Under the pieces are notes generated by a model. The model searched no databases and was not told where the DNA came from. It saw only the letters and a program-made list of their open reading frames with translations. A stretch of 64,000 bases of DNA, from positions 1 to 64,000 of the IMG/VR virus record IMGVR_UViG_3300035183_000733. One strand, written 5' to 3'. Shown here one piece after another: positions 4,330-57,675 of this stretch (within the stretch, counting starts at the first letter, position 1; each line of letters starts with the position of its first letter). A program made the position numbers and the translations under genes.

Positions 4330-4759
4330 ATGAGACACATCAAACTATACGAGGACTTCAAGGAGCAGAAGACGTACTACACGACCTCGTCGCCCATGAG
4401 CATATCCGAGTTCGTGGAGACCGAGGTGGAGGATCGCGGCAACTACGAGCAGGACCAGGTCGACGCCTGGATCGAGCAGTACGGGATAACCGACGACTCC
4501 GAGCTGCTGTGGATCACGACTACGCCGTGGATGGCCGCGAGGTACCAGATGAACGCCGAGGACTGGCACGACGCCGAGAGGATATACAACGCCAACAAGA
4601 GTGACTACCCGGTTCAGACGGTCGACGCGTCGGAGGGGACCATAGTGGAGGAATCCGACGACGGCGACGACGGATACATAATGATACTGAAGAAATCACC
4701 TGAGGAAGTACAACGACTTCGCCGACGACGACGGATACATAATGATACTGAAGAAATGA
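4330..4759 (+). CDS. hypothetical cargo protein (fused to next gene via tandem duplication)
   Basis: MRHIKLYEDFKE; natural end DDGYIMILKK seen in the duplicated unit. Confidence 0.55.
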
Positions 4760-4791
4760 ACCACCTGAGGAAGTACAACGACTTCGCCGAC
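4666..4791 (+). repeat. 61/65-bp tandem duplication spanning a stop/start overlap
   Basis: GACGACGGATACATAATGATACTGAAGAAAT(GAAC)CACCTGAGGAAGTACAACGACTTCGCCGAC twice. Confidence 0.9.
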
Positions 4792-5580
4792 GACGGCGAC
4801 GAAATGAAGGTGCACGCTAAGAAGGTGCACGTCGCGCAGAAGGAGGACGAGTCCGTCAAGGCGTTCAACGACGCAGGACCCATGAAGATAGCGAACGGGT
4901 GGATGCTGTACCTCGACGAGGATAAGCAGATGCCGGTTGGTTCCGCCTTCATCAACATCAACACCAACGGCGCGCTCGCGCTGAGGGAGGTTGAGATAGC
5001 GAAGGGGATGCACAACAAGGGCATCGGTACCAAGTTCATGGAGCAACTGTGTAAGGCAGCGGACGACCATGGCTGGAAGATAGTGCTGACGCCGGACACA
5101 TACAAGGGCTCCGCAATGGGCAGGCTCAAGGAGTTCTACAAAAGGTTCGGGTTTGTTGACAACAAGGGGCGCAATAAGGACTGGTCCGTGCGGGAGACGA
5201 TGTACAGGGACGCCGGATCACTGGAGGAGAAGCTGGCGGTCGTGCCGCCGGACATAAGGAAGAAGCGCGTTGAGCAGAACTCGAAGATAGCCAAGGAGCT
5301 CGGACTGCGATTCGAGGGGGACTACGTCCAGCTGTACCACGGGACGAGCAAGGCAAACCTTAGCAAGATATACAAGTCCGGCAAGTTCAAAAGCGGAACG
5401 TGGTTCGCCACAGATCTGGAGACCGCGCAGAAGTACGCGAAGGCCAATCACAACACGAGCGCGGTAGACACCGTGTGGGTGTACATGGGCTCTCTGGTGT
5501 ACAACGGTTACTTCTCGAGTCAGGAGGAACTGTACTTTGGCAACAACAGATATTCGCCGAAGGACATAATATATAAGTAG
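4756..5580 (+). CDS. GNAT acetyltransferase + ART-like domain fusion
   Basis: MNHLRKYNDF leader; KGIGTKFMEQL...FYKRFGF (GNAT); LYHGT...GTWFATDLETAQKYA (ART-like). Confidence 0.65.
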   Translation: MNHLRKYNDFADDGDEMKVHAKKVHVAQKEDESVKAFNDAGPMKIANGWMLYLDEDKQMPVGSAFININTNGALALREVEIAKGMHNKGIGTKFMEQLCKAADDHGWKIVLTPDTYKGSAMGRLKEFYKRFGFVDNKGRNKDWSVRETMYRDAGSLEEKLAVVPPDIRKKRVEQNSKIAKELGLRFEGDYVQLYHGTSKANLSKIYKSGKFKSGTWFATDLETAQKYAKANHNTSAVDTVWVYMGSLVYNGYFSSQEELYFGNNRYSPKDIIYK

Positions 5581-8767: not shown

Positions 8768-9455
8768 ATTCGAGTATGTTTCTCGCCTCTGTGGCGAAGT
8801 GTTTTTCTATAAGCATTATCTTGTAGTGGCGGTTCCACCCGCCGTACGAGCTGCGCCCGAGTATCTTGTCTATCTTCGGCCACAGGTTGTTGCGCTCGAT
8901 CTTGTTGGAGACCTTGGTTATCTCGCTCTCGAGCTGCGGGTCCAGTAGCAGCGAGTGCGTCTTGTAGTGCGGCTCGACCTTCTGGGCGAACACCCACTCC
9001 TTCTGGAACACCCACTGCCAGTATCCCACCTTCGGGTTCTTCGGGTTGGTCTGCTTCCACATCTGCTGGAACATCCCTTGCTGCCTCGTGGTCAGCAGGC
9101 CATCGGTTACTATCTTGTTCCACGTCTTGTGGTCGATCGGTTTGGTGAAGTGCTGCATCGGCAGCATCTTCTTCGTCTTGTAGTCCTTGTATTGGAACTT
9201 CTTGTCCCTGGAGTACTGTGTGTTCTGTAGGTACTTGAGCAGACCCCGGTAGATGTTGGCTTCGCGGCTCTTGGCGACGTCCTCCCGGAGTACGAAGTAC
9301 CGCTTGTAACCGCTGCGCACCGGCTTCTCGAGCTCCACCAGGCGCATGCTGCGCTTGGCCCTCATCAGGCGCATGTAACGCCTGTAAGTAGATATTAGAT
9401 CCTTCTCCGCCTTTGCCTTGTCGCGCCTCTGGCGCGACTTGTCGATGTCTTTCAT
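8754..9455 (-). CDS. basic hypothetical protein
   Basis: 233-aa K/R-rich ORF coupled to neighbours. Confidence 0.7.
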   Translation of the reverse strand: MKDIDKSRQRRDKAKAEKDLISTYRRYMRLMRAKRSMRLVELEKPVRSGYKRYFVLREDVAKSREANIYRGLLKYLQNTQYSRDKKFQYKDYKTKKMLPMQHFTKPIDHKTWNKIVTDGLLTTRQQGMFQQMWKQTNPKNPKVGYWQWVFQKEWVFAQKVEPHYKTHSLLLDPQLESEITKVSNKIERNNLWPKIDKILGRSSYGGWNRHYKIMLIEKHFATEARNILEYEPE

Positions 9456-10333
9456 TTCTTAGCCTTGTTAACGTGGTCGAGCCAGCTGTCCATCGACATT
9501 ATACCAACCGCGCCCATCTCGACCATCTCGTCCATGGAGTATCTGTCCCCTGCCTCGCTCTTGTAAATATAGCCGTTCTTCGTTTCGATTTTCTCGTACA
9601 GAACGCCGTTGTGCCCGAAGTAGTCCGGCAGCGGCGTGTTCTTGCGGCGCTTCTTCTTGTCGTGCCTAATGTTCACGACCTCCATTATCAGAGAGAACGC
9701 CATTGCCATGTACACGTAACCCTTTGGCACCTCGGTGCCGAGACCGTCGGCAAACAACGAGAAGCCTATGAGGATGAGGAACGACAGCGCGAGGATCTTT
9801 ATAGACGCGTGTTTCTCGACGACCCTGCTGATGGGCGTGAAGAAGAAGTACATGGCTATGATGGCCAGCAGCGTAGCACCGACCTGGATGTACCTGTCGT
9901 TCGACATGCCTATGGCCGTTATTGTGGAGTCAATGCTGAACACGAAGTCTATGAGCGCCATGGTCCCGACTATCTTGCCCATCGTGCCCGCCAGGCTCTG
10001 GTGCGATTCTTCTCTGTGCTCGACTTTGTTGTACAGTTCCTTGACGGCCTTGTACATCAGGAACAGGCCACCGGAAACCATTATCAGGTCGTGCAATGTT
10101 ATTTCCCTATTGACCACAGTGAGCAACGGTTTCTCCACAGCCGACAGGAACCCTGCCATCGAGATGAGTATCGTGTTCATCGCTATGGAGACGAGCACGC
10201 CGATTTTCCGGGCCCCGTTCCTTGTCTTCTTGTCCAGCTTGGACGTTACTATTGATAGGAATATCACGTTGTCCACGCTAAGGACTATCTGGAGCATCGC
10301 CAAGCCGAGGAATGATAGGATGAATTGCTGCAT
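9452..10333 (-). CDS. terC: TerC family membrane protein
   Basis: LQIVLSVDNVIF, DFVFSIDS, multiple TM helices. Confidence 0.85.
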   Translation of the reverse strand: MQQFILSFLGLAMLQIVLSVDNVIFLSIVTSKLDKKTRNGARKIGVLVSIAMNTILISMAGFLSAVEKPLLTVVNREITLHDLIMVSGGLFLMYKAVKELYNKVEHREESHQSLAGTMGKIVGTMALIDFVFSIDSTITAIGMSNDRYIQVGATLLAIIAMYFFFTPISRVVEKHASIKILALSFLILIGFSLFADGLGTEVPKGYVYMAMAFSLIMEVVNIRHDKKKRRKNTPLPDYFGHNGVLYEKIETKNGYIYKSEAGDRYSMDEMVEMGAVGIMSMDSWLDHVNKAKK

Positions 10334-14124: not shown

Positions 14125-15336
14125 ATGAACCAGGGAAGGTACATAATCATAGGAGCCACTCACACCGGCATCCAGCTAACCAAAAAGCTGAAAGGCATCG
14201 CCATATCGGTAGTGCTCGCGGATACTCGCGAATGCCCTGACAGGGACGTCAAGAGCGTATACAAGCAGCTCGACATAATTGAGGATGCTGTTGTGCTCGG
14301 CGGGGATTGTTACTTCGTGACGTTCGACGAGGACAGCGCCAACGTGCGCATGTGCCTATCGATAAACAGGCAGCACAAAGACTCTCAAATATACACGATG
14401 CTCGCGCAGGAATCGCTCGGCGATAAGGTCGCCAAGTGCATGCCGAACTTCAGGTACATAAACCCGGCAAAACAAGCGGCAAAACAGTTCGTGAGGACGG
14501 CCGTGTCGAACCCCCAGCATACAGCGGAAACCAAGTTCAAGTGGCCAAAGTTGAAGTTGAAGTTGAAGCTCGATAGTCTCGTGAAGAAAGCGATAACGTT
14601 CATACTATCGGTCATGCTCGCCTCGACACTGTTCTTTCATTTCTATGACGGGCTGCTCTGGATAGATTCGTTCTACTTCACGGTGACCATGATGGCCACG
14701 GTTGGATTCGGCGACTACTCGCTCAAGGACCACTCTGGCCTCTCAAAAATAGTCGGCAGCCTCATCATGATGTTCGCCGTAACCGGTACGGCCATAATAT
14801 TCGCTCTCGTATCAGACAGCATCATCCGTAGACGGAAAGAGCTGTCCATGGGAAGAACGAGCTACAAGGGGCACGGGCACGTTCTCGTTGTCGGCGGCGG
14901 TTCGGTCGGATTCAATGTGATAAAACTATTGCTCGAGCAGGGTGAGAAACCGGTCATACTCGACAAGACGCTCGACGGCAGATACAGCCAACAGATAGTG
15001 GACCTCGGAGTTCCGTATCTGGTGGGTAACGCGAAGGACGAACAAAACTTATACAGGGCCGGACTCGGCCAATGCAAAGCCCTTATATGCGTTACGCAGG
15101 ACGACCTCACCAACCTCGAGGTCGGACTCGACGCGAGAACCGGCAGGCCGGACTTGCGCGTGGTGCTAAGGATATACGACCAGAATCTCGCGGTCAATCT
15201 CAGGGACGCTGCGGCTATAAAACACACGCTGTCTATGTCAAACATCGCGGCAGAGGAGTTCGTGGAAATGGTATCGACGCCACAGGCGCAGGCGATAATA
15301 CAGATGACAAAAAACTCGATAAAAACAACGATATGA
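14125..15336 (+). CDS. potassium channel with RCK/TrkA domains
   Basis: TM-FYFTVTMMATVGFGD-TM K+ filter; VVGGGSVG Rossmann RCK domain. Confidence 0.9.
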   Translation: MNQGRYIIIGATHTGIQLTKKLKGIAISVVLADTRECPDRDVKSVYKQLDIIEDAVVLGGDCYFVTFDEDSANVRMCLSINRQHKDSQIYTMLAQESLGDKVAKCMPNFRYINPAKQAAKQFVRTAVSNPQHTAETKFKWPKLKLKLKLDSLVKKAITFILSVMLASTLFFHFYDGLLWIDSFYFTVTMMATVGFGDYSLKDHSGLSKIVGSLIMMFAVTGTAIIFALVSDSIIRRRKELSMGRTSYKGHGHVLVVGGGSVGFNVIKLLLEQGEKPVILDKTLDGRYSQQIVDLGVPYLVGNAKDEQNLYRAGLGQCKALICVTQDDLTNLEVGLDARTGRPDLRVVLRIYDQNLAVNLRDAAAIKHTLSMSNIAAEEFVEMVSTPQAQAIIQMTKNSIKTTI

Positions 15337-19876: not shown

Positions 19877-19951
19877 GTCTCGATAGTATAGCGGCAATTA
19901 TACAACGGTCTCTAAAACCGATAGACATGGGTTCGAATCCCATTCGAGGCA
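19877..19951 (+). tRNA. amber suppressor tRNA(CUA)
   Basis: GTCTCGA/TCGAGGC acceptor; CGGT-CT-CTA-AA-ACCG. Confidence 0.9.
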
Positions 19952-20017
19952 CTTTTTTATAGTTTGGTGTCACAGGGAAAAAGAAGCAGAATTAAGAAAT
20001 AAATTAAAACAAAAGCC

Positions 20018-24105: not shown

Positions 24106-24241
24106 GGGGAAGTAGCCAAACGGTAAAGGCACAAGTCTGTTAAAACTTGCAACACGTACAAAACCATAACGTTACTCTACTTTCTATTGAAAGAACTAAA
24201 TGTTATTTCAGTATCTGGAGGTTCGAATCCTTCCTTCCCCA
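24106..24241 (+). ncRNA. Tyr-like tRNA scaffold with TTCAGTA module in the variable arm
   Basis: GGGGAAG/CTTCCCC acceptor, T arm, 8-nt anticodon loop CTGTTAAA, ~60-nt insert. Confidence 0.75.
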
Positions 24242-24368
24242 CTTTGTTAGTTCATTGATATTTTGAAATTTGATTGGTCGTAAGACGGACAGACAAACAC
24301 ACGCCGCTACGAAAGTAGAATGAATCCTCGGAAGCGTACCGGGCTGTCCCAAGACAGATCAGATAAAT

Positions 24369-24530: not shown

Positions 24531-24725
24531 TTGGAAGTAACTCTTCCACAAGCAAAGAGAGAAACTTGGCGAGTTTTCAGTAAAATTAGCTCAACTGGAA
24601 GAGCGTTTGCCTACTAAGCAGAATGTTGCGGGTTCGACTTCCGTATTTTATACCTAACAATTCGCTTCCATATCTCTCCCACACTGCCGATTAAACGGCA
24701 CAGGAGACTAAGTGCACCTTCAGTA
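24531..24725 (+). ncRNA. Arg-like tRNA scaffold (anticodon ACT, 24580-24652) flanked by two TTCAGTA modules
   Basis: cloverleaf GTAAAAT/ATTTTAT; TTTGC-CT-ACT-AA-GCAGA; modules end at 24582 and 24725. Confidence 0.7.
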
Positions 24726-26987: not shown

Positions 26988-28076
26988 ATGGTAAATTTCA
27001 AAGACCTACTAAAGGGATGCAGGCTGCACAAAGATGCGGACGGCAACATAATCGTTCAGTCAATCCTGAACATGCAGCTGGTTTGTCTGACCACCGACAG
27101 TGAGTTCAGCCACAACAAGTTCGCTAACCCTATGGACGTGCTTGGTTCTAACCAAAGATACGGGCACCTCAACCTTACCAACCCCGAGAACAAGGACATG
27201 ATAGTCCCTGCTCAGATAGCCGTTCTCACCAAGCAGAGCGCGCAGAACCACGGGATGGTGAAGGCCGCGTACATCCCGTCGAAGTCGAGATCCGACTTCT
27301 ACGACGCTGGGTGTGTGCAGGGATCGCAGCCCGGTTACATCCGCGCTAACAAGAACGACCAGGAGATCCGTTTCCTTCCGTTTGGTGTGCGCGAGTACAT
27401 CTGGAACAAGGTGAACAAGACCGGTAGCCACGATAACATCTACGCAGCCATCGACAAGGTTGGTCGCGATACTGGAGCTAACTCCGGAACGTATATCGAC
27501 CAGTACTTCAAGAAGTTCGATAAGGAGATAAACGAGTTCATCGCGCACTTCGAGCGCCCGAAGAACACCATCGGCACCATCGTGCTCATCGACGGTGAGA
27601 TAATCGCCATCGACAAGTTCCCGAGCTTCGAGTACTGCGAGCAGGTGTGGGACGCGCTGATACGCGACTGCTACGGTGCCATTGCCATTACGCAGGAAAG
27701 GCAGGGCAAGAAGGCCCAGTCACTGTTCACCGAGAACATGTCTAAGCAGAAGCGCAAGGCAAACGAATCGCCGGCAGCGTACCTGAAGAGGATCATGACT
27801 TCCACCAAGAAGTCTATCGAGGACAACGTGCGCGCTAAGCTTGAGGAAATTCTCGAGCTCAGCTTCAGCGAGAGGCAGGACACCGACCTCAATGGCCAGA
27901 ACGGGTACACATCTAAGATCCTCACCGCGGAGGGCTACATAGGACAGAAGATTTCCGAGTCCAACTACCACCACCTGGTGTCTGTTGTGCGCAAGGAGTC
28001 GTTCGACCCGGAGCGTTTCCGCAAGGCAAACGAGATGCGCTCGAAAGCGAGCAAGCAGAGGGGATTCGAGATTTAA
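26988..28076 (+). CDS. ARPP-1/DUF6569-like protein
   Basis: L.N...AQNH...GCVQG; IGTIVLIDGEIIAIDKF...WDALIRDCY. Confidence 0.6.
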   Translation: MVNFKDLLKGCRLHKDADGNIIVQSILNMQLVCLTTDSEFSHNKFANPMDVLGSNQRYGHLNLTNPENKDMIVPAQIAVLTKQSAQNHGMVKAAYIPSKSRSDFYDAGCVQGSQPGYIRANKNDQEIRFLPFGVREYIWNKVNKTGSHDNIYAAIDKVGRDTGANSGTYIDQYFKKFDKEINEFIAHFERPKNTIGTIVLIDGEIIAIDKFPSFEYCEQVWDALIRDCYGAIAITQERQGKKAQSLFTENMSKQKRKANESPAAYLKRIMTSTKKSIEDNVRAKLEEILELSFSERQDTDLNGQNGYTSKILTAEGYIGQKISESNYHHLVSVVRKESFDPERFRKANEMRSKASKQRGFEI

Positions 28077-30298: not shown

Positions 30299-30475
30299 AT
30301 GGCAAAAACAGCTAAAAAGTCGACAGCAAAAAAAGCTAAGGCTACTAAAAAAGCAAAGCCTGCGGCTAAGAAAGCTGCGGTAAAGAAAACTGCTAAACCT
30401 GCGAAGAAGAGCACGCCGAAGGCGAAGGCTACTCCGAAGGCTGAGCCAGCGAAGAAGGAAACTTCACCTCGCTAA
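30299..30475 (+). CDS. 58-aa histone H1-like Lys/Ala/Pro-rich protein
   Basis: MAKTAKKSTAKKAKATKKAKPAAKKAAVKKTAKPAKK...; below ORF-track cutoff. Confidence 0.75.
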   Translation: MAKTAKKSTAKKAKATKKAKPAAKKAAVKKTAKPAKKSTPKAKATPKAEPAKKETSPR

Positions 30476-30650
30476 GCTCAAAAAGGTTGTGTGACGTCGC
30501 TGAGGGAACCCAGTGGACACAGAGGATTATCGTTCCATTCCAGATTGACCATCCTCAAGCAACACTCTCCTGAAAACTGGCGTACGCCCGGAGCAATCCG
30601 GGCCGCGGCCAAGCTGAGTCTCTTAGCCCCCTAAGGCTCAGCGGAACATT

Positions 30651-30777
30651 TGTCGAGTACAACTGGAGGTCAAGCGCTGATCAAAGGTGGTCCTGACGGG
30701 AAGCAGCAGTCTAATTAACTGCTGGAGCCCGATCAAACTCAGCAAAGGAAGTGCGGGTTCGAATCCCGCCTCGACGG
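30651..30777 (+). ncRNA. enlarged tRNA-like RNA (127 nt)
   Basis: TGTCGAG/CTCGACG acceptor, GCGGG-TTCGAAT-CCCGC T arm, multi-hairpin interior. Confidence 0.6.
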
Positions 30778-30958
30778 CAGTGCAAGAACTACGGTGAACA
30801 TGGGTTCGTCCCTCCGCCGTAGTTTTTAAAAATGAATTAAAAACCGAAACAATTCGGGATATATAGAGTATAAAGATAAGATTGTTCTACCTTATTCCCA
30901 ACAAATGGCAGATATACAAACAGGGACTTGCCAGGTAAAATAGTCGAACTAAAAAGAC

Positions 30959-31045
30959 ATGAAGAAGTATAACGCATATCAGCAGTATAATCAAAATCAG
31001 AATCAAAGTTCTGGGCTGAGCGTTATTTCCCCATTTGAAAAGTAG
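30959..31045 (+). CDS. attenuator leader peptide (Tyr/Asn/Gln-rich, 28 aa)
   Basis: MKKYNAYQQYNQNQNQSSGLSVISPFEK*. Confidence 0.85.
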   Translation: MKKYNAYQQYNQNQNQSSGLSVISPFEK

Positions 31046-31065
31046 TAACACACTATACAACGCGT

Positions 31066-31097
31066 AAAAGGCCCAGGACAAAATCCTGGGTCTTTTT
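31066..31097 (+). terminator. attenuator terminator of the Asn/Tyr/Gln tRNA operon
   Basis: GGCCCAGGA-CAAAA-TCCTGGGTC-TTTTT. Confidence 0.85.
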
Positions 31098-31101
31098 ACT
31101 T

Positions 31102-31190
31102 GGGTGGATTACCGTAGAGGCCGAACGGTCCAGACTGTTAATCTGGTGTGACGACGAGTCCCATCGCAGGTTCGAATCCTGCTCCGCCCG
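31102..31190 (+). tRNA. tRNA-Asn(GTT), long variable arm
   Basis: CCAGA-CT-GTT-AA-TCTGG, G73. Confidence 0.9.
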
Positions 31191-31226
31191 CAAAAATAGG
31201 TCCGACACGGGTAGATAGTAAATTAT

Positions 31227-31300
31227 GGACATGTAGCTCAGCAGGTCAGAGCAGCTCACTGTTAATGAGAAGGCCGGGGGTTCGAATCCCTCCTTGTCCG
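31227..31300 (+). tRNA. tRNA-Asn(GTT)
   Basis: cloverleaf. Confidence 0.95.
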
Positions 31301-31305
31301 CAAAT

Positions 31306-31380
31306 TTCTTGGGTGAGTCGGCTGTTTATTACGCGCGCAGCTGACGGTTGGAAGAAGAGGTTCGAGTCCTCCCTAAGGAG
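31306..31380 (+). ncRNA. D-armless tRNA-like element
   Basis: TTCTTGG/CTAAGGA, GAGG-TTCGAGT-CCTC, single GTCGGCTG/CAGCTGAC arm. Confidence 0.4.
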
Positions 31381-31390
31381 CAACAAATAT

Positions 31391-31480
31391 GGGTGTACGG
31401 TCGCGACGGTGGAGCGACCCCAGTCTGTAAAACTGGGACATTTAAAGAAACGCCGGGGGTTCGAAATCCCTCTACACCCA
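31391..31480 (+). tRNA. tRNA-Tyr(GTA)
   Basis: CCAGT-CT-GTA-AA-ACTGG; 8-nt T loop. Confidence 0.85.
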
Positions 31481-31485
31481 CACAT

Positions 31486-31567
31486 TGAGGAGCGCTAACG
31501 TTGGAGAGTTAGACCAGTCTGTAAAACTGGTGCTTCGGCTGAGTGGGTTCGAATCCCATCTCCTCAA
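31486..31567 (+). tRNA. tRNA-Tyr(GTA)
   Basis: cloverleaf with class II arm. Confidence 0.9.
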
Positions 31568-31574
31568 CTTAAAT

Positions 31575-31658
31575 TGTCCGATCGCCTAATGGCATGGCGC
31601 CGGGTTTTGGCCCCGGTGGGAAGTAATTCCTGTGTAGGTTCGACCCCTGCTCGGACAA
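31575..31658 (+). tRNA. tRNA-Gln(TTG), long variable arm
   Basis: CCGGG-TT-TTG-GC-CCCGG; GGGAA-GTAA-TTCCT arm. Confidence 0.9.
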
Positions 31659-31776
31659 CAAGACATCGACAGAGGTACTCGTCCGCAGACGTGTGGAAAA
31701 GTGTGTGCTTGCGACCATTAAAGTCTCTGTGTATCCCAATAGGTAGGAAGTAATTACTCTGAATGATTGGGAATAC

Positions 31777-31849
31777 TGTCCTGTAGTGTAACTGGCAACA
31801 CGTCGGGTTTTGGCCCCGAAGATTCCAGGTTCGAACCCTGGTGGGACAA
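31777..31849 (+). tRNA. tRNA-Gln(TTG)
   Basis: cloverleaf. Confidence 0.95.
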
Positions 31850-31887
31850 CAAAACGAAATTTATTTCGTATCTTTGAAGTATTATAT

Positions 31888-31960
31888 TGTCCTGTAGTTC
31901 AACTGGCAGAGCGCCTGATTCTGGATCAGGATGTTGGAGGTTCGAACCCTCCCGGGACAA
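31888..31960 (+). tRNA. tRNA-Gln(CTG)
   Basis: CCTGA-TT-CTG-GA-TCAGG. Confidence 0.95.
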
Positions 31961-32045
31961 CATGGGAATTAAGAACAACAATTAGTAGATAGATGCTGTA
32001 ATCCTAAATACACACAAAAGACTGGTGGCGGATATATTTGGAAAT

Positions 32046-33587
32046 ATGAGCATAATAACTAAAAAAGATTCGGGGAGGGTACGCGTACGTTTCGCGCCCT
32101 CCCCTACGGGACCCCTGCACTTAGGAGGGATCAGGACCGCATTATACAACTACCTGTTTGCTAAGAAGCACGGCGGCGATTTCATACTTCGCATCGAAGA
32201 TACCGATGCGATGAGGTTCGTGCCAGGCGCCGAAGAGTATATCATCGAAGCGCTGAAGTGGTGCGGTATATCGCCCAACGAAGGCGTTGGATTTGGCGAT
32301 GGTCCGCATGCACCATACAGGCAGTCGGAGAGAAAATCCATTTACAAGGAATACGCTATTAAGCTCGTGGAGCTCGGCCATGCATACTATGCGTTTGATA
32401 CTGGGGTATCGCTCGAAGAGAGACGCGCTGTCAACAAGAATTTTATGTATAACGGGGTGACTCGCGAGTCGCTGAGAAATAGTTTGACGTTGTCTTCTGA
32501 TGAGGTGAAATCGCTATTAGACTCGGAGACGCCGTACGTTATTCGGTTTAAGATACCGCGCAACACCGAGGTCGTGGTTAACGACATAGTTCGTGGTGCA
32601 ATAAGGGTCAACACGAACACGCTCGACGACAAGGTATTGTTCAAGAGTGACGGCATGCCTACTTACCACCTGGCGAACATTGTGGATGACCATCTCATGG
32701 GGATCACCCATGTAATCCGAGGTGAGGAGTGGTTGCCGTCTGCCCCGCTGCACGTTCTTTTGTACGAGGCTCTCGAGTGGGACGCCCCAGAGTTCTGCCA
32801 CCTTGCGTTGATACTTGGGCCTAACGGCAAGATGAGCAAGCGCGACATGGATTCTCTCGGGTTCCCAGTGTACCCGCTTGATTGGACAGATCCCAACACG
32901 GGGGAAAAGGCATCCGGATACCGTGAGATGGGATTCCTACCGGAAGCGTTCATCAACATGCTTGCGTTCATCGGATGGAACCCCGGCAACGGCAAGGAGA
33001 TAATGGGTCTCGACGAGATGGCAGAGGTGTTCGACCTCAGGAAGGTTCAGAGAGCTGGTGCCAAGTTCGACCCAAAGAAGGCGGAGTGGTACAGCAAGGA
33101 GTACATGAGGGTCGCTGACGACGCCGTGCTCGTCGAGAAGTGGATACCGGATCTGTGGGATAACGTTGATAAAAGCATTCCGCTTTCTCGCGTTTCTTCC
33201 GAGTACCGCACGAAGGTCGTCCACTTACTGAAGGAGAAGGTGGCATATCTCGGAAAGTTTTGGGAGAACGGCAGTTACTTCTTTATTGATCCAACCGATA
33301 TGTCGGTGCTCGATGAGTTGGCCGCGTCTAATGATAAGGTAACTCCGTTTATATTAAGCATGATGTCTAAGCTGATCGCCGATGATGTATTCGATATGAC
33401 TACCACTAAGGCTTGCTTTGATTCTGCCATAGCAGAATCCGGCATTGAGCCGCGCGAGGCCGGTAAGGCATTGCGTGCTGCAGTTTGCGGCAACAAAGTG
33501 GGGCCGCCGATGTTCGACATATTGGTGGTGCTCGGAAAGAACACCACGTTGTCTCGTCTTAAGAACTGCGCAACTGCACGAAGCTAA
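32046..33587 (+). CDS. gltX: glutamyl-tRNA synthetase
   Basis: RFAPSPTGPLHLGG, LRIEDTD, HVIRGEEW, KMSKR. Confidence 0.95.
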   Translation: MSIITKKDSGRVRVRFAPSPTGPLHLGGIRTALYNYLFAKKHGGDFILRIEDTDAMRFVPGAEEYIIEALKWCGISPNEGVGFGDGPHAPYRQSERKSIYKEYAIKLVELGHAYYAFDTGVSLEERRAVNKNFMYNGVTRESLRNSLTLSSDEVKSLLDSETPYVIRFKIPRNTEVVVNDIVRGAIRVNTNTLDDKVLFKSDGMPTYHLANIVDDHLMGITHVIRGEEWLPSAPLHVLLYEALEWDAPEFCHLALILGPNGKMSKRDMDSLGFPVYPLDWTDPNTGEKASGYREMGFLPEAFINMLAFIGWNPGNGKEIMGLDEMAEVFDLRKVQRAGAKFDPKKAEWYSKEYMRVADDAVLVEKWIPDLWDNVDKSIPLSRVSSEYRTKVVHLLKEKVAYLGKFWENGSYFFIDPTDMSVLDELAASNDKVTPFILSMMSKLIADDVFDMTTTKACFDSAIAESGIEPREAGKALRAAVCGNKVGPPMFDILVVLGKNTTLSRLKNCATARS

Positions 33588-33605: not shown

Positions 33606-34271
33606 TCAAGCCGCGCTATTCTTGATTCTTCGAGTCCACTTCTTTCTGACCTTCTTTATGTTCAGTAAAAGATTTCTCTCTTTTTTAATCATGTTGTCGA
33701 CCTTGCTTATTGTGGTACCCAGTTCCTTCGCGATGTCTTTCATTATCACGTCACCCCGATGCTTAAGTATTATGTTTAACGCCGGGTATTTGTTCGGACA
33801 TTTACGTAGCACATGCTTGGCCTTGTCGAGCTTGTCGAGCTGTACATCGTACTTTTTTCGGACCATCTCCTTTACCTGAAAGTGTATGTTTGAGTCTATG
33901 CCGGCATACCTCCTATACACGGACATGGTCTCGTTGCCCGAGAGGTGTAACTTGACATCCTCACATCTGTCGTACTTTGAATCTTGTTTGATCCATTGCA
34001 AGCACTCCATGTATGCTATATGATGCAGCCAAGTGGTGAATTTAGACTTGGTCTTGTCAAATTTTTTATGATACTGTAACAACCGCAAGAATGTCTGCGA
34101 CACTATATCGTCAGCAACTATAGGCCCCACTTTATTTGCTGCAAAATGCCGAATTTTCGACCCGAACACCTCGAACGCCATACCGACGAGCTCGGGGTCC
34201 TCGGCAATGCCATCTTGTATTATCCTTACCTTGTCTTTGTCCATAAGCATTATATCGCGACCATGACGCAT
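33606..34271 (-). CDS. sigma-70 (ECF-like) sigma factor
   Basis: DDIVSQTFLRL...FDKTKSKFTTWLHHIA; C-terminal HTH IAKELG. Confidence 0.8.
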   Translation of the reverse strand: MRHGRDIMLMDKDKVRIIQDGIAEDPELVGMAFEVFGSKIRHFAANKVGPIVADDIVSQTFLRLLQYHKKFDKTKSKFTTWLHHIAYMECLQWIKQDSKYDRCEDVKLHLSGNETMSVYRRYAGIDSNIHFQVKEMVRKKYDVQLDKLDKAKHVLRKCPNKYPALNIILKHRGDVIMKDIAKELGTTISKVDNMIKKERNLLLNIKKVRKKWTRRIKNSAA

Positions 34272-48766: not shown

Positions 48767-49072
48767 ATGTCAGATTTTAAAGTAGAGCGGACTTACAAAG
48801 AAGTCGGCGTCATTAAGAAGCAGGGCACAGACCTAACACACCTCGTAACAAAGTTCAATGGTCCCCTCGATGGTCTTAAAACAATGACCGTCAAACCGGG
48901 CGTGGGCGAGTACTCGTGGGTGCAGAGCCTGATAGTCCCGCTCAAGAGCAACGAGACTATATACATTCACCCGGACCAGACCGGCGTCGGCGTCGGATTC
49001 GTCCGCATAATTCATTCCCATTTAAAGGCTATCGCCGTATTCCACAAGTCACATTTCGATACCATATTATGA
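48767..49072 (+). CDS. hypothetical protein
   Basis: 101-aa ORF. Confidence 0.6.
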   Translation: MSDFKVERTYKEVGVIKKQGTDLTHLVTKFNGPLDGLKTMTVKPGVGEYSWVQSLIVPLKSNETIYIHPDQTGVGVGFVRIIHSHLKAIAVFHKSHFDTIL

Positions 49073-49587
49073 AGTGCGTGAGAGTCGGCAAGTCGGCGAT
49101 TGTGGGCAAGGGACTGTTCGCGTGCGAGCCCATAAGACCAGGAGACGAAATCGCGGAATACGTCGGCCGCAAGCTAACCAACAAAGAATTCGACATCTTG
49201 TTCTCCGCGGGCATGTGGCTCTATGCAGTTTCCGTGCCGAACGGCGTTATCGACGCCGCGGGGGCGGAGTGGGACGGTTATCCTGCAAAGTTCAGCAACG
49301 ACGCCATGGGGCTAACAAGAACCGGCGCAAGGAACAACGCGACATTCAGGTACTCCGGCAAGAGGGGCAACTACCGGGTGCACATCGTGGCGACCAGGTA
49401 CATAAAATCCGGCGACGAGATATTCACTTCATACGGCCGGAGCTATTGGAGCAATTTTAAAAATGAGCAAGAACTAAATAGAGCAGCCTGCATTACTACG
49501 GTCTCGGTGAGGACCGGGAGAAGGATCCCCTCGACGACCCCCACTTCTACGACAGGATGCGGAGCATCGGATACACCAAGCGTGTGA
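49069..49587 (+). CDS. SET-domain methyltransferase
   Basis: GKGLFA...IAEYVG...AKFSND...NATF...IKSGDEIFTSYG..YW. Confidence 0.85.
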   Translation: MKCVRVGKSAIVGKGLFACEPIRPGDEIAEYVGRKLTNKEFDILFSAGMWLYAVSVPNGVIDAAGAEWDGYPAKFSNDAMGLTRTGARNNATFRYSGKRGNYRVHIVATRYIKSGDEIFTSYGRSYWSNFKNEQELNRAACITTVSVRTGRRIPSTTPTSTTGCGASDTPSV

Positions 49588-52237: not shown

Positions 52238-52318
52238 ATGAAGCAAATGATTAACATAGTTCGAATTAGCAGAAGGCGCTCAGACGTCCTGTCCGGATTA
52301 TGTCCAATCGTAAGCTGA
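52238..52318 (+). CDS. attenuator leader peptide (Ile/Arg, 26 aa)
   Basis: MKQMINIVRISRRRSDVLSGLCPIVS*. Confidence 0.85.
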   Translation: MKQMINIVRISRRRSDVLSGLCPIVS

Positions 52319-52344
52319 TAACATCGCTTTTCTTTTGGGACAAG

Positions 52345-52373
52345 AAACCCGGACCTAATCGTCCGGGTTTTTT
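52345..52373 (+). terminator. attenuator terminator of the Ile/Arg tRNA operon
   Basis: AAACCCGGAC-CTAATC-GTCCGGGTTT-TTT. Confidence 0.85.
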
Positions 52374-52382
52374 ATTTTACAC

Positions 52383-53662: not shown

Positions 53663-55090
53663 TTATGCGTACATCTCTTTCAAAGTTATGAATCGCCTGT
53701 GGTCGCCACAGGCGACGAGCAGGTCCTCCTTCTTGAACTCGGAAGGGTGGTGGTACCCGCAAGCGTTGGACATCTCGTGGATCTCTTTGCGCAGCTGCTT
53801 GATGTAGTTAGCTGCGCGGACGGATTTGAGCGTCGGGTCTATGCCGTTCTGCAGCCACTTGTTCTGTGTGGCCACGCCAGACGGACACCTGTTCGTGTGA
53901 CAAACCTGTGCCTGGATACAACCGATGGACATCAGCGCTTCCCTACCGACGTTAACCATATCACAGCCGAGCGCAAATGCCTTTATGGCATTGGCTGGAA
54001 GCCCGAGCTTGCCAGACCCGATGAACACTACGTTGTCGAGCGCCGGGTAAACTCTGAATATTTTTATGATGCTGTGTATTGCCTCGTTGAACGGCAGAGA
54101 CAGGTGGTCTGTGAATGATGGTGGTGCTGCACCAGTGCCGCCCTCGCCGCCGTCTATTGTGATGAAATCCGGGCCGAAACCGGACATGGCCATTTGCGTG
54201 GCGAGCTCCTCCCAGTCTTTTACGCTTCCAATCGCCGCCTTTATACCGACAGGCAGACCGGTTGCGTTTGCTATCTCTTCGATAAAGTTTATCATGCTTG
54301 TCACGTCCTTGAACGCGCTGTGAGTGCTTGGCGACACGGCGGCCTTGCCCATTTCGATGCCCCTGGCGTCTGCGATCTCCTGTGTCATCTTCGCGGCCGG
54401 CAGAATTCCTCCCTTGCCGGGCTTCGCGCCCTGGGACAGCTTTATCTCGATTGCCTTTATGCAGGGATTATCTTGCACGAGTTTCTTCAGCTTCTCGAGC
54501 GAGAACTTACCCTTCTCGTCGCACACTCCGAAGTATCCAGTTCCGAACTGGAACACCACGTCAGCCCCTTGCTTGTGATACACTGACAATCCGCCCTCCC
54601 CAGTGTTGTGGTAACAACCAGCGAGCTTAGCTCCGCCGTTAAGTGACTCTACAGCCTTTGCCGATAACGCGCCGAAGCTCATGCCAGATATGTTCACTAT
54701 AGAGTTTGGTGTGTATGGTTTTGCACGCTTGCCTTTGCCGAGCTGTTTCTTGCATGGCAGGTGACCGATGTTGTCGGAGTGCACCGGCATCATCTTGTGC
54801 TTTATGATTATGTGACCGGGTTCGTTGAAGTCCATGTCTGTACCGAACCCTGTGAGGTTGTTCTCATCCTTCGCCGAGGCATATATCCAAGCTCTGTGTC
54901 GCCTCGAGAATGGAAGCTCCTCTCTATTGTTGGCGATGAAGTACTGCCGGATTTCTGGACCTATCTTCTCGAACAGATAACGGATGTGTCCTATCACCGG
55001 GAAGTTGTGGGTTATTGCGTGTCTGTTTTGCATTATGTCGCGTATGGCAACTACGGCCAGGAAAGCGACGAACAATAATAAATATAACAT
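53663..55090 (-). CDS. FMN-binding glutamate synthase family protein
   Basis: SGMSFGALS, NTGEGG, EIKLSQGAKPGKGG, IDGGEGGTGAAP, CIQAQVCHTNRC. Confidence 0.92.
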   Translation of the reverse strand: MLYLLLFVAFLAVVAIRDIMQNRHAITHNFPVIGHIRYLFEKIGPEIRQYFIANNREELPFSRRHRAWIYASAKDENNLTGFGTDMDFNEPGHIIIKHKMMPVHSDNIGHLPCKKQLGKGKRAKPYTPNSIVNISGMSFGALSAKAVESLNGGAKLAGCYHNTGEGGLSVYHKQGADVVFQFGTGYFGVCDEKGKFSLEKLKKLVQDNPCIKAIEIKLSQGAKPGKGGILPAAKMTQEIADARGIEMGKAAVSPSTHSAFKDVTSMINFIEEIANATGLPVGIKAAIGSVKDWEELATQMAMSGFGPDFITIDGGEGGTGAAPPSFTDHLSLPFNEAIHSIIKIFRVYPALDNVVFIGSGKLGLPANAIKAFALGCDMVNVGREALMSIGCIQAQVCHTNRCPSGVATQNKWLQNGIDPTLKSVRAANYIKQLRKEIHEMSNACGYHHPSEFKKEDLLVACGDHRRFITLKEMYA

Positions 55091-56184: not shown

Positions 56185-57675
56185 TTATCTGTGTATTGAT
56201 AGACCAGCAATATAATTGTTTACGGCGAATACGGTATCGTTGTACAGCTCGGCAACCTTGTCGGAATCCGGCTCGTCCATCAGGTCGGCCTGCTCGAACG
56301 CGGTGCCGAGGTCCTTCAACTTCTGTGCTGCGTCGTCCATGAGCTTGTTCAGCTCCACCTTGCCGTACCGTATACTCTTCAGGTACTCGGCCTCCGGCCT
56401 CCTCACTATAATGCCGCGGCCGGCGGCGATGTCCTCGCTCATGTATATGAGGCGCATGCAATGCAGCATGTTCTTGCCGTCGATCTTCTGGTTGTGTCCC
56501 TCAACGTCGATCCACCTCGCCTCGTTACGCTCGCGCCTCCAGGTCATGTACCGGTTGTACAACTTGCAGTGGGACATGAAACCGTCCTTGTTGTAACTCA
56601 TGTAGCACATTGGTACTGCATCCTTAGGCGTCTTGCTTAGACGGATAGTATCCGAGTCGTCGAGCACGATGCCCTTGTACCCGAGCATCTTCAATCCGTG
56701 TGATTTGACCCATTCAAGGGTCCGCTCCGGATCATCGGCGAAGTACGCACTGAACATGCCTCCGTTTAATTCCCCGAGATACCCACGGACTACATCGTTG
56801 TCCTTTATATCTGTCGCAGGTCGAGCCCCCTCTATTATCTCTTTCAGGTACACGATGGTATGTGCGAGTCGGTCGTAATATACGCCATACATGTCGCGCA
56901 TGTGCTCCACAGCGTTCAGCGCGCAGAACCTCTGTTCCATGCCTCTTTCGGAGAGCCACTGCTCTATGGGAACACTACCCTGACCAACGAACGTGTAGCA
57001 GAAGTCGAGTGGACCCTTGCGTTCCATCTTCTCCTTCTCCCAGTTGTTCAGCTTGTCCTGACCGTCGGCCTTGCGTATCTGACTCTCCCCGTAACCGAGG
57101 AACGCCTTGTAACAAAGCTTCGACAGAAACACTTCCGGGCGTTTGAGCAATATGTCCATCTCTGGGTGTTTGTAAACGAGGCAGTCGTCCGGTATGTCGA
57201 AAACCTCGAGCATGTTTGGGTTGTTCACCGCGAGCAGCGATATGAACTTGCGCATCGAGTAGTAAGTGGTCTCCTCGTTGGTTTCCATGTTCTTCTCCTT
57301 TATTTCCTCCCAGTCGGGGTTGAAATCGAACATGGAGTAGTACGAATCCGGGAATATGAACACGGCCTTGTAGTCGGTGTCGGACGTCGGCACGTTGGTG
57401 CCGTATGCCCTGCTGCCGGTTATGTACTTTAGCACGATGTACTGCTCGATGTCCTTTGACGTGAGGGCCTTCCGGAAGTTGTGCCTCGCGTGCCCGTACT
57501 CGAATCTGTACTTGTCGCCAAGGTAATCGACGTAGACGAACCCATCGAGTATGTCGGTAATGGGGAACGCGTAGTCCTTCTTCTCGAACACCCTCGTGCT
57601 GTCGTCGGTCACGCACAGTGCGGACATCTTATTCTCCACCTTGTAGAACTCTCCTATTTTGAGATTTATTAGCAT
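56185..57675 (-). CDS. DNA polymerase beta superfamily nucleotidyltransferase (RlaP/NrdC.11-like)
   Basis: ITGSRAYGTNVPTSDTDYK; NNPNMLE; KNMLHCMRL. Confidence 0.85.
   Translation of the reverse strand: MLINLKIGEFYKVENKMSALCVTDDSTRVFEKKDYAFPITDILDGFVYVDYLGDKYRFEYGHARHNFRKALTSKDIEQYIVLKYITGSRAYGTNVPTSDTDYKAVFIFPDSYYSMFDFNPDWEEIKEKNMETNEETTYYSMRKFISLLAVNNPNMLEVFDIPDDCLVYKHPEMDILLKRPEVFLSKLCYKAFLGYGESQIRKADGQDKLNNWEKEKMERKGPLDFCYTFVGQGSVPIEQWLSERGMEQRFCALNAVEHMRDMYGVYYDRLAHTIVYLKEIIEGARPATDIKDNDVVRGYLGELNGGMFSAYFADDPERTLEWVKSHGLKMLGYKGIVLDDSDTIRLSKTPKDAVPMCYMSYNKDGFMSHCKLYNRYMTWRRERNEARWIDVEGHNQKIDGKNMLHCMRLIYMSEDIAAGRGIIVRRPEAEYLKSIRYGKVELNKLMDDAAQKLKDLGTAFEQADLMDEPDSDKVAELYNDTVFAVNNYIAGLSIHR

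What the first reader, a model, noticed from the sequence alone, without database searches (positions are those of the whole stretch)
31777..33587. GluRS gene at the end of a Gln-sensing operon with no tRNA-Glu
SEEN: gltX directly follows three tRNA-Gln genes, the leader has no Glu control codons, and an internal TATCTTTG promoter precedes tRNA-Gln(CTG)-gltX. KNOWN: non-discriminating GluRS and GluRS2 charge tRNA-Gln with Glu for GatCAB amidation. INFERENCE: this enzyme serves tRNA-Gln, paralleling argS after the Arg tRNAs.
Basis: inference. Interest (0 to 1): 0.6.

Follow-up and report, generated by a model that had tools for sequence, protein, structure and literature searches.

The report
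Phage glutamyl-tRNA synthetase beside tRNA-Gln genes
A giant phage from a microbial mat carries an intact, working-looking glutamate-charging enzyme right after its glutamine tRNA genes. Related phages suggest this position is left over from an older cluster of charging enzymes, so it does not prove the enzyme charges glutamine tRNA.

Summary
gltX (32046-33587, +, 513 aa) is a complete bacterial-type GluRS. [quoted passage not shown] These lie downstream of an Asn/Tyr/Gln-rich leader peptide with a textbook attenuator, and no other + strand terminator precedes the gltX stop.

The window is the first 64 kb of a 373,759-bp phage contig from a microbial mat. The claimed argS parallel is wrong: I found no ArgRS. 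TATCTTTG is present but not conserved in relatives. A second TAnnTTTG box sits 5 nt before the gltX ATG.

The enzyme belongs to a phage-only GluRS clade (100/100 support) that branches among Bacteroidota GluRS. It is not GluRS2. The two specificity residues (K398, G486) match cellular Bacteroidota, including a putative non-discriminating lineage, so they decide nothing.

In relatives, tRNA-Gln(CUG) always precedes the synthetase block, and the gene after gltX varies:
- A catalytically truncated GatB (the tRNA-Gln/Asn-binding half) in seven loci.
- A true GlnRS in one locus, which also has an AsnRS before gltX.
- Nothing in this window.

I favour an ordinary tRNA-Glu-charging enzyme whose position is inherited from an ancestral synthetase block (0.45). 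A tRNA-Gln-charging role that relies on host GatCAB stays open (about 0.3).

The parts
30959..31045 (+). Leader ORF of 28 codons, rich in Asn, Tyr and Gln (MKKYNAYQQYNQNQNQ...)
   Evidence: Nearly identical in L002 and L107. L225 has a different sequence with the same composition.
31064..31099 (+). Intrinsic terminator of the leader. Its 5' arm can instead pair with 31008-31017, which is the antiterminator.
   Evidence: Folds: 3:4 hairpin -20.8 kcal/mol (z -6.5); 2:3 alternative -23.4 kcal/mol. It is the only + strand terminator between 30900 and 33700.
31102..31301 (+). Two tRNA-Asn(GUU) genes, the first with a long variable arm (90 nt)
31391..31568 (+). Two tRNA-Tyr(GUA) genes
31575..31659 (+). 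tRNA-Gln(UUG), 85 nt, long variable arm, U1-A72
   Evidence: (49.5 bits)
31777..31850 (+). tRNA-Gln(UUG), 74 nt, U1-A72
31869..31876 (+). TATCTTTG, a Bacteroidota-type -7 box candidate 12 nt before tRNA-Gln(CUG)
   Evidence: Not conserved in relatives.
31888..31961 (+). tRNA-Gln(CUG), 74 nt, U1-A72. A copy of this tRNA precedes the synthetase gene(s) in every relative with upstream sequence.
32033..32040 (+). TATATTTG, a second -7 box candidate, ending 5 nt before the gltX ATG
   Evidence: Same spacing before the first ORF after the tRNA in L002 and L107.
32046..33587 (+). gltX, a bacterial-type glutamyl-tRNA synthetase of 513 aa. HIGH = HLGG, KMSKS = KMSKR.
   Evidence: dN/dS 0.05-0.07 against relatives.
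33606..34271 (-). Convergent sigma-70 region 2 (ECF-like) sigma factor gene. It marks the end of the + strand unit. In sister phages the GatB-tail gene sits between it and gltX.

Best explanation
This is a functional glutamate-activating GluRS. An ancestor of a group of huge phages took it from a Bacteroidota bacterium long ago. It sits in the translation island of a roughly 374-kb phage from a microbial mat.

It lies at the 3' end of a + strand unit that starts with an Asn/Tyr/Gln-codon leader peptide and its attenuator. No terminator lies in between, so read-through transcripts can reach it. It probably also has its own promoter box.

I think its most likely job is the ordinary one: making Glu-tRNA-Glu during infection, from host tRNA-Glu and from any phage copy outside the window.

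Its position after tRNA-Gln is best explained by history. The ancestral locus carried the Asn/Tyr/Gln tRNA array followed by a block of tRNA-handling genes. That block still exists as AsnRS-GluRS-GlnRS in one relative and as GluRS plus a GatB tail in others. This phage has lost everything after gltX.

Shown: gene identity, intactness, purifying selection, clade membership, synteny, and the fold of the attenuator.

Inferred: the tRNA substrate, co-transcription, and the order of gene losses.
For: Identity and integrity:
- GluRS family assignments.
- The glutamate-pocket residues of T. thermophilus GluRS (R5, A7, S9, E41, Y187, N191, R205, W209; list from my own knowledge of the solved complex) are all matched in the alignment (R15, A17, S19, E51, Y207, N211, R225, W229).
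- dN/dS is 0.05-0.07.

Origin:
- The best cellular relatives are Bacteroidota GluRS at 48-57% identity.
- Nine phage-type sequences form one clade with 100/100 support. Its sisters are a Saprospiraceae and a Chitinophagales sequence.

A historical reason for the position:
- L232, a member of the same clade, has tRNA-Asn x2, Gln x2, Tyr x2 and Gln(CUG), then AsnRS, GluRS and GlnRS.
- In a second huge-phage clade (L018, L023), GlnRS directly follows three tRNA-Gln genes while GluRS lies about 8 kb away. GluRS therefore coexists with GlnRS in huge phages.
- The slot after gltX varies from a 354-aa GatB-tail protein to nothing.

Specificity:
- The specificity-linked residues equal those of cellular Bacteroidota GluRS.
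- According to PMC3927822, 12 of 14 Bacteroidetes genomes have GlnRS and lack gatCAB.

Transcription:
- No + strand terminator lies between the attenuator and the gltX stop.
Against: - No tRNA-Glu gene appears among about 79 tRNA genes in this clade's sequenced neighbourhoods.
- A copy of tRNA-Gln(CUG) stays next to the synthetase block despite many local rearrangements.
- In seven related loci the gene after gltX is the half of GatB that selects tRNA-Gln and tRNA-Asn and rejects tRNA-Glu (PMC2811023). That is odd company for an enzyme that handles only tRNA-Glu.
- 0 of 80 cellular Bacteroidota gltX loci have a tRNA-Gln or a GatB tail within 4 kb.
- The phage clade has lost a YD...W motif that is 88-93% conserved in cellular enzymes, and it carries a 6-7-aa insertion in the anticodon-binding domain.
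Confidence: 0.45

Rival explanations
1. The phage GluRS accepts the phage's own tRNA-Gln, either non-discriminating or Gln-preferring. Glu-tRNA-Gln is then amidated by the host's GatCAB. In sister phages the truncated GatB encoded next to gltX acts as a tRNA-Gln-selective helper, like a transamidosome without its catalytic part. This phage has lost that helper.
For: - tRNA-Gln(CUG) lies immediately upstream of gltX or of the synthetase block in the window, L002/L003, L107, L225, L005 and L232.
- A GatB-tail gene directly follows gltX in L002/L003, L107, L108, L225, L005 and L227, on both main branches of the clade.
- The tail protein aligns to GatB residues about 242-483 at 30-37% identity overall and 40-49% in the tail. 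[quoted passage not shown]
- Bacteroidota GatB is its closest full-length relative, so hosts with GatCAB exist.
- All three phage tRNA-Gln have U1-A72.
- The leader's Gln codons would then control both the tRNA and its charging enzyme.
- No tRNA-Glu lies nearby.
Against: - No aminoacylation data exist.
- K398 and G486 are the same as in cellular Bacteroidota enzymes.
- The window's contig has no GatB-tail motif (four patterns) and no GatB catalytic motif.
- L232 carries a GlnRS beside the same-clade GluRS.
- The tail also occurs away from any GluRS, in an NADAR/Macro/RNA-repair context in L228.
- The isolated YqeY domain of Deinococcus GlnRS did not bind tRNA or act in trans (PMC1865053).
- Most Bacteroidetes sampled in PMC3927822 lack gatCAB. 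In such a host, mischarged tRNA-Gln would be harmful.
Confidence: 0.3
2. The enzyme is a spare GluRS that keeps Glu-tRNA-Glu supply going when the host's own GluRS is shut down, for example by a HipA-type kinase toxin acting as abortive-infection defence. The substrate is still tRNA-Glu. The selective reason is counter-defence rather than tRNA supply.
For: - HipA of E. coli inactivates GltX by phosphorylating the Ser of the KMSKS-type loop (established knowledge, not tested here).
- The phage clade differs from 89-99%-conserved cellular residues right around that loop: K258G, G268M and a 2-residue shorter loop.
- At least three separate viral GluRS clades exist in IMG/VR, so GluRS is repeatedly kept by large phages.
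- The window also carries RNA-repair and ADP-ribosyl-related genes.
Against: - The loop Ser is retained (KMSKR).
- No toxin or kinase link was tested.
- This idea does not explain the tRNA-Gln and GatB-tail linkage.
Confidence: 0.1
3. The protein is a GluRS-derived enzyme with a non-canonical role, such as a GluQRS-like tRNA modifier acting on the Q34 tRNAs (Asn, Tyr) of the same cluster.
For: - tRNA-Asn and tRNA-Tyr, which carry queuosine in bacteria, share the unit.
- GluQRS models give secondary hits.
Against: - The protein has the full C-terminal anticodon-binding domain that GluQRS lacks.
- It scores 429.7 bits on gltX_bact against 180.8 bits on GluQRS, whose cut-off is 276.7.
Confidence: 0.03

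Closest known systems
Bacteroidota GluRS (solved: Elizabethkingia GluRS, PDB 6B1Z and 6BRL)
   Same: Same domain order and length. phmmer E 1.4e-159 over residues 11-507. HIGH, KMSKS and the glutamate pocket are conserved. A basic residue sits at the T. thermophilus R358 position and Gly at the T444 position.
   Different: - The phage enzyme belongs to a separate phage-only clade.
- It has a shorter KMSKS loop, a 6-7-aa insertion at 377-382, and has lost the YD...W motif.
- It sits next to tRNA-Gln, which none of 80 cellular loci do.
Non-discriminating GluRS with GatCAB, and the Thermotoga maritima glutamine transamidosome (PDB 3AL0)
   Same: It is a bacterial-type GluRS encoded beside tRNA-Gln. 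In sister phages it is also encoded beside the GatB part that holds the tRNA elbow in the transamidosome (PMC2811023).
   Different: - No catalytic GatB, GatA or GatC was seen.
- The GatB piece lacks the cradle domain.
- This phage lacks even that piece.
- Activity on tRNA-Gln is untested.
GluRS2 of Helicobacter pylori and Acidithiobacillus (tRNA-Gln-specific)
   Same: The proposed role would be the same. Gly sits at the position equivalent to H. pylori G417 (position mapping from my own knowledge).
   Different: - The HIGH motif is HLGG, not the H-phi-G-N that PMC3927822 reports for most GluRS2.
- It branches with Bacteroidota GluRS.
- Lys, not Glu, sits at the R358/E334 position.
Deinococcus radiodurans GlnRS with an appended YqeY/GatB-like domain
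   Same: A GatB/YqeY-type module is associated with a Glx-tRNA synthetase and raises affinity for tRNA-Gln (PMC1865053).
   Different: - There the module is fused to a GlnRS and works only in cis.
- In the phages it is a separate gene after a GluRS, and it is more like GatB than any fusion protein.
E. coli pheST operon under pheM leader-peptide attenuation
   Same: A synthetase gene lies downstream of a leader peptide plus a terminator/antiterminator (established knowledge).
   Different: - Here the leader codons (Asn, Tyr, Gln) match the tRNA genes of the unit, not the synthetase's amino acid.
- The main cargo is tRNA genes, and the element is in a phage.
Code-change module of Jade phages (suppressor tRNA, TrpRS, RF1)
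   Same: A phage synthetase is encoded with tRNAs in standard-code early genes (bioRxiv 10.1101/2021.08.26.457843).
   Different: The two suppressor tRNA(CUA) genes of this window lie elsewhere, have G1-C72 and a tRNA-Trp-like anticodon arm, and are unlike the tRNA-Gln genes.

Membership tests
Bacterial-type glutamyl-tRNA synthetase (TIGR00464) | Class I catalytic domain with HIGH and KMSKS motifs | tested here: met
   PF00749 1.2e-90. HLGG at residues 25-28 and KMSKR at 262-266.
Bacterial-type glutamyl-tRNA synthetase (TIGR00464) | Alpha-helical anticodon-binding domain, and a score above the curated equivalog cut-off | tested here: met
   PF19269 1.4e-18. TIGR00464 429.7 bits against a cut-off of 289.95.
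Bacterial-type glutamyl-tRNA synthetase (TIGR00464) | Conserved glutamate-binding residues | tested here: met
   R15, A17, S19, E51, Y207, N211, R225 and W229 align with T. thermophilus R5, A7, S9, E41, Y187, N191, R205 and W209 (residue list from my own knowledge).
Bacterial-type glutamyl-tRNA synthetase (TIGR00464) | Glutamylates tRNA-Glu | not testable with these tools
   Needs an aminoacylation assay.
Non-discriminating GluRS | Glutamylates tRNA-Gln as well as tRNA-Glu | not testable with these tools
   Needs an aminoacylation assay.
Non-discriminating GluRS | Loss of the Arg that reads C36 (T. thermophilus R358) | tested here: inconclusive
   The phage has K398. Among 120 homologues the column is K in 101 and R in 19. 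Fluviicola-type Bacteroidota have R here, and PMC3927822 lists a Fluviicola species as non-discriminating. The rule therefore does not separate the types in this phylum.
Non-discriminating GluRS | Genome context: GatCAB present and GlnRS absent | tested here: inconclusive
   No GlnRS or gat gene was found among the window ORFs scanned, and no GatB catalytic motif on the contig. The host is unknown. GatA and GatC were not searched.
GluRS2 (tRNA-Gln-specific paralogue) | Branches with GluRS2 sequences and has HIGH motif H-phi-G-N | tested here: not met
   The motif is HLGG. The protein lies among Bacteroidota GluRS. It scores higher against T. maritima GluRS1 (297.5 bits) than GluRS2 (258.2 bits). 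Motif rule from PMC3927822.
GlnRS | Beta-barrel anticodon-binding domain and a glnS model score | tested here: not met
   TIGR00440 45.7 bits against a cut-off of 425.8.
GluQRS (YadB) | Catalytic domain only, with no anticodon-binding domain | tested here: not met
   The C-terminal Anticodon_2 domain is present. The GluQRS score of 180.8 bits is below its cut-off of 276.7.
Leader-peptide transcription attenuator (trp/his/pheST type), as the head of the unit | Short ORF with clustered regulatory codons, a downstream intrinsic terminator, and an overlapping antiterminator | tested here: met
   The 1:2, 2:3 and 3:4 pairings are all predicted. The unit is conserved in L002 and L107, and in L225 with a different peptide of the same composition.
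Leader-peptide transcription attenuator (trp/his/pheST type), as the head of the unit | Read-through responds to supply of the charged tRNA and reaches gltX | not testable with these tools
   No intervening terminator was found. No usable RNA data were available.

The most novel reading that the evidence does not exclude
A lineage of huge Bacteroidota phages carries its own entry into the indirect glutamine pathway. A phage-specific GluRS charges the phage's tRNA-Gln with glutamate. It is helped in most members by a stand-alone, catalytically dead GatB fragment that picks out tRNA-Gln. Host GatCAB finishes the job. The whole unit is switched on by a leader peptide that senses shortage of charged Asn, Tyr and Gln tRNAs.
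Probability: 0.3. Interest if true: 0.75.

Novelty: new variant of a known kind. Interest (0 to 1): 0.5.

Why it matters
Phage-encoded synthetases are known but mostly uncharacterised, and which tRNAs they serve is an open question for huge phages.

This locus gives a concrete, testable case:
- A phage-only GluRS clade is kept under strong purifying selection.
- It is always linked to tRNA-Gln(CUG).
- In most members it is linked to a stand-alone GatB tRNA-binding half. I found no published description of that gene pair.
- The gene also sits at the end of a tRNA unit headed by a leader-peptide attenuator whose codons match the unit's tRNAs. I found no report of this arrangement for tRNA genes or for phages.

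If the enzyme does charge tRNA-Gln, phages would be shown to tap the indirect amide pathway. If it does not, the locus shows how gene order left by decay of a synthetase block can mimic a functional pairing.

Tried and rejected
- **Complex prediction.** GluRS of L002 (P0002) with its GatB-tail neighbour (P0121) gave no verdict, score 0.00. This is not evidence either way.
- **tRNA-Glu pattern scan.** A Bacteroidota tRNA-Glu (L081) does not even carry that pattern.
- **Other parts of the contig.** The 64-73.6 kb stretch has large minus-strand ORFs and no tRNA.
- **GatB-tail scans.** Scans of IMG/VR found the tail only on L005's contig or nothing. The metagenome scan found three small loci. One shows the tail away from GluRS.
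- **Origin of the tail.** I tested whether it is a leftover of a GlnRS-YqeY fusion. An exhaustive search found short tail-only proteins and GatB among the best 150, and no GlnRS fusion, so I dropped that idea. Whether L232's GlnRS carries a tail is unknown, because the contig ends.
- **The Arg358 and T444 residue test** proved uninformative in Bacteroidota.
- **GlnRS homologue search.** A search meant to learn which Bacteroidota have GlnRS returned no organism names.
- **Sequencing runs.** Runs are contigs only and probably DNA, so they gave no transcript ends or co-transcription evidence.
- **Stop-codon recoding.** There is no clear lengthening of ORFs under TAG, TGA or TAA reassignment in this window.
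- **Suppressor tRNAs.** The suppressor tRNA(CUA) genes are not tRNA-Gln-like, so I did not pursue a link between gltX and amber suppression.
Full report
**What the window is.** The window equals positions 1-64000 of JGI contig Ga0373637_0000024, also filed as IMGVR_UViG_3300035183_000733, which is 373,759 bp long. Public runs that hold it come from a microbial mat. Relatives at about 90-95% identity occur in wastewater and soil assemblies. The gene content is phage-like: many orphan ORFs, an AAA ATPase, a UvrD helicase, a sigma factor, RNA-repair and ADP-ribosyl-related domains, and a collagen-like protein just beyond the window. There are 25 tRNA genes. Nothing in the ORF lengths argues for stop-codon reassignment in this stretch.

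**Checking the observation.**
- The ORF 32025-33587 has its probable ATG at 32046.
- Its 513-aa product is a bacterial-type GluRS: Pfam tRNA-synt_1c plus Anticodon_2, and NCBIfam gltX_bact 429.7 bits against a cut-off of 289.95.
- GlnRS and GluQRS models score far below their cut-offs.
- HIGH (HLGG), KMSKS (KMSKR) and the glutamate-pocket residues align with T. thermophilus GluRS.
- Against four relatives, dN/dS is 0.05-0.07, so the gene is under purifying selection.
- Three tRNA-Gln genes precede it. All have U1-A72 and the shared acceptor stem TGTCC.../...GGACA.
- The argS parallel is not there. Genes after the Arg tRNAs are on the other strand, and none of the large ORFs is an ArgRS.

**The "Gln-sensing operon".**
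- The leader at 30959-31045 packs 4 Asn, 3 Tyr and 5 Gln codons into its first 16 codons. A strong terminator follows, ending 3 nt before the first tRNA-Asn.
- Folding gives the three classic pairings. The last control codons pair with 31008-31017. That segment can instead pair with the 5' arm of the terminator (-23.4 kcal/mol). Otherwise the terminator itself forms (-20.8 kcal/mol, z -6.5).
- The leader DNA is almost unchanged in L002, although synonymous sites of the neighbouring gltX are saturated.
- In the more distant L225 the peptide is different (MTKMNNNQQNYYQNQ...) but keeps the same composition and the same pairing segments.
- I therefore accept the attenuator as real. It senses Asn, Tyr and Gln together, not Gln alone.
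- Three further units of the same build precede the Phe/Pro/Val, Trp and Ile/Arg tRNA groups.

**Does the attenuated unit reach gltX?** My own scan finds no other + strand hairpin with a U-run between 30900 and 33700, so read-through can reach gltX. Against a simple operon, a second TAnnTTTG box ends 5 nt before the gltX ATG, and L002 and L107 have a box with the same spacing before the first ORF after the tRNA. The motif is only marginally enriched in the window. Co-transcription is therefore plausible but unproven.

**Where the enzyme comes from.**
- Its best cellular relatives are Bacteroidota GluRS at 48-57% identity, spread over all orders.
- Nine phage-type sequences form one clade with 100/100 support: the window, P0002-P0005, P0008, L005, L225 and L227. 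Identities within the clade fall to about 50%. Its sisters are a Saprospiraceae and a Chitinophagales sequence.
- Two other viral GluRS clades exist in IMG/VR.
- The enzyme is not a GluRS2. Its HIGH motif is HLGG rather than H-phi-G-N (PMC3927822), and it scores better against GluRS1-type structures.

**The anticodon-residue test.**
- T. thermophilus R358, whose change to Gln relaxes discrimination (PMC2978374), aligns with K398.
- T444 aligns with G486. I take T444 to correspond to H. pylori GluRS2 G417, from my own knowledge.
- Among 120 homologues the first column is K in 101 and R in 19.
- Fluviicola-type sequences have R and G at these two positions, like everything else in the phylum. 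PMC3927822 names a Fluviicola species as the one Bacteroidetes genome with a non-discriminating GluRS.
- The test therefore cannot separate the two types here.
- The phage clade does differ from strongly conserved cellular residues in other places: around the KMSKS loop, in a 6-7-aa insertion at 377-382, and by loss of a YD...W motif in the anticodon-binding domain. I cannot interpret these changes.

**Gene order in relatives.** This is the most informative evidence.
- A tRNA-Gln(CUG) gene almost identical to the window's lies just upstream of gltX in L002/L003, L107, L225 and L005. The spacers range from 18 to 610 nt and sometimes hold small ORFs.
- None of 80 cellular Bacteroidota gltX loci has a tRNA-Gln within 4 kb.
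- Directly after gltX, seven loci encode a 167-354-aa protein with Pfam GatB_Yqey: L002, L003, L107, L108, L225, L005 and L227.
- That protein aligns to GatB from about residue 242 to the end, including a degenerate version of the YRYFPEPDL motif. It lacks the whole catalytic cradle.
- Its nearest full-length relatives are Bacteroidota GatB at 40-49% identity in the tail.
- An exhaustive search finds only short tail proteins and GatB among the best 150 hits, and no GlnRS fusion.
- The tail gene occurs on both main branches of the clade, so it is ancestral.
- L106 keeps only a 98-aa N-terminal remnant.
- The window has nothing between gltX and the convergent sigma gene. Four conserved tail motifs and two GatB catalytic motifs are absent from its contig in IMG/VR.

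**Evidence pointing the other way.**
- L232, whose GluRS (P0008) is sister to L005's, has tRNA-Asn x2, Gln x2, Tyr x2 and Gln(CUG). These are followed by an AsnRS (NF003037, 414.7 bits), the GluRS, and the N-terminal 261 aa of a GlnRS (TIGR00440, 383 bits for the fragment) before the contig ends.
- In L018 and L023, from another huge-phage clade, a 534-aa GlnRS starts about 15 nt after three tRNA-Gln genes, while GluRS lies about 8 kb upstream.
- Huge phages therefore do place a synthetase right after its cognate tRNAs, but for tRNA-Gln that synthetase is GlnRS, and GluRS coexists with it.
- The tail protein is also found with no GluRS next to it, among NADAR, Macro, HAD (RNA repair), deaminase, SIR2 and PRPP synthetase genes in L228.
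- The isolated YqeY domain of Deinococcus GlnRS neither bound tRNA nor worked in trans (PMC1865053).

**Weighing the readings.**
- The simplest account of all loci is an ancestral arrangement: the Asn/Tyr/Gln tRNA array followed by a block of genes that handle these and related tRNAs (AsnRS, GluRS, and GlnRS or a GatB tail). Lineages then lost different parts of the block.
- On that account, the window's gltX stands next to tRNA-Gln because everything else in the block is gone, and it does what GluRS does elsewhere. I give this reading 0.45.
- The alternative is a real division of labour in which the slot after GluRS holds either GlnRS (direct route) or a GatB tail (indirect route through host GatCAB). 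It fits the complementary pattern and the lack of any tRNA-Glu in about 79 neighbouring tRNA genes. It needs a GatCAB-bearing host and an untested specificity. I give it about 0.3.

**Novelty.** I found no paper describing a phage GluRS paired with a stand-alone GatB fragment. I also found none describing leader-peptide attenuation of tRNA genes. The survey of recoded phages notes that synthetases predicted to serve phage tRNAs are rarely found (bioRxiv 10.1101/2021.08.26.457843). The enzyme itself is a new member of a known family. Its clade and context make it a new variant worth an aminoacylation assay.

Noticed in passing
window 42666-42812, 46558-46690, 52238-52382 (and 30959-31099): There are four units of the same build: a short ORF starting MKK/MKN/MKQ, then a strong terminator ending just before a tRNA group. 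The ORF codons match the tRNAs that follow. MKKMINIVLVFPVFVSF precedes Phe/Pro/Val/Val. MKNLIHIHHIWQ precedes Trp, with His further on. MKQMINIVRISRRRS precedes Ile/Arg/Arg. This looks like leader-peptide attenuation of tRNA genes in a phage.
   Followed up: partly
window 31102-31191, 31575-31659, 43088-43174, 47316-47401: Asn, Gln, Val and His tRNAs occur in a second version with a long variable arm (85-90 nt) beside a normal-length copy. The long Asn and Gln versions recur in L002, L005, L107, L225 and L227. In L227 they are the only two tRNAs near GluRS and the GatB tail.
   Followed up: partly
window 19877-19952 and 42187-42258: There are two suppressor tRNA(CUA) genes. Both have G1-C72 and an anticodon arm almost identical to the window's tRNA-Trp, and neither resembles the tRNA-Gln genes. 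ORF lengths in this window show no clear TAG recoding, so any recoded genes would lie elsewhere on the contig.
   Followed up: partly
L232 1-4814; L018 11143-12993; L023 19035-21464: Other huge phages carry synthetase genes right after tRNA arrays. L232 has AsnRS-GluRS-GlnRS after Asn/Gln/Tyr tRNAs. L018 and L023 have GlnRS starting about 15 nt after three tRNA-Gln genes.
   Followed up: yes
L002 11554-12426, L005 11550-12614, L107 5466-6299, L108 1772-2605, L225 8001-8810, L227 8001-8504, L228 1258-1776: This is a family of stand-alone GatB C-terminal halves (helical plus tail domain, no catalytic cradle) with a conserved LRALICYVEFTDLI motif. In six of these seven loci the gene sits directly after gltX. 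In L228 it sits among NADAR, Macro, RNA-repair HAD, deaminase, SIR2 and PRPP synthetase genes.
   Followed up: yes
window 30480-30830: A roughly 350-nt non-coding stretch ends in a tRNA-like T-arm and acceptor-like strand, followed by a hairpin with a U-run. It has no Rfam family and no tmRNA call. A wastewater relative lacks 30484-30902 (a joint), so it may be an optional or mobile RNA element.
   Followed up: no
window 30905-30943: A mini-ORF (MADIQTGTCQVK) lies just upstream of the leader peptide. It is conserved as MADIQTGTRQV... in L002 and L107.
   Followed up: no
window 31302-31390: The spacer between tRNA-Asn and tRNA-Tyr contains a T-arm-like GGTTCGAGTCC segment. L002 and L107 have a third tRNA-Asn at this place, so this may be a decayed tRNA gene.
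   Followed up: no
window 24106-24242 and 24580-24654: One tRNA-Asn(GUU) call has a 42-nt insert after the anticodon (Rfam tRNA 47.8 bits over 136 nt). A 75-nt tRNA has the unusual anticodon ACU and is also present in L002.
   Followed up: no
window 53663-55090 (-): A 475-aa protein carries the FMN domain of glutamate synthase (PF01645, 1.8e-76), which is an unusual metabolic gene for a phage.
   Followed up: no
window 56185-57675 (-), 26988-28076 (+), 4330-5580 (+), 48916-49587 (+), 14125-15336 (+), 9452-10333 (-): Other notable domains are RlaP (RNA repair), ARPP-1, GNAT with ART-PolyVal, a SET domain, a TrkA-N potassium channel and TerC.
   Followed up: no
window 30301-30477 (+): A 58-aa Lys/Ala-rich, histone-H1-like protein is encoded just upstream of the non-coding element. 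A TACATTTG box lies 42 nt before its start.
   Followed up: no
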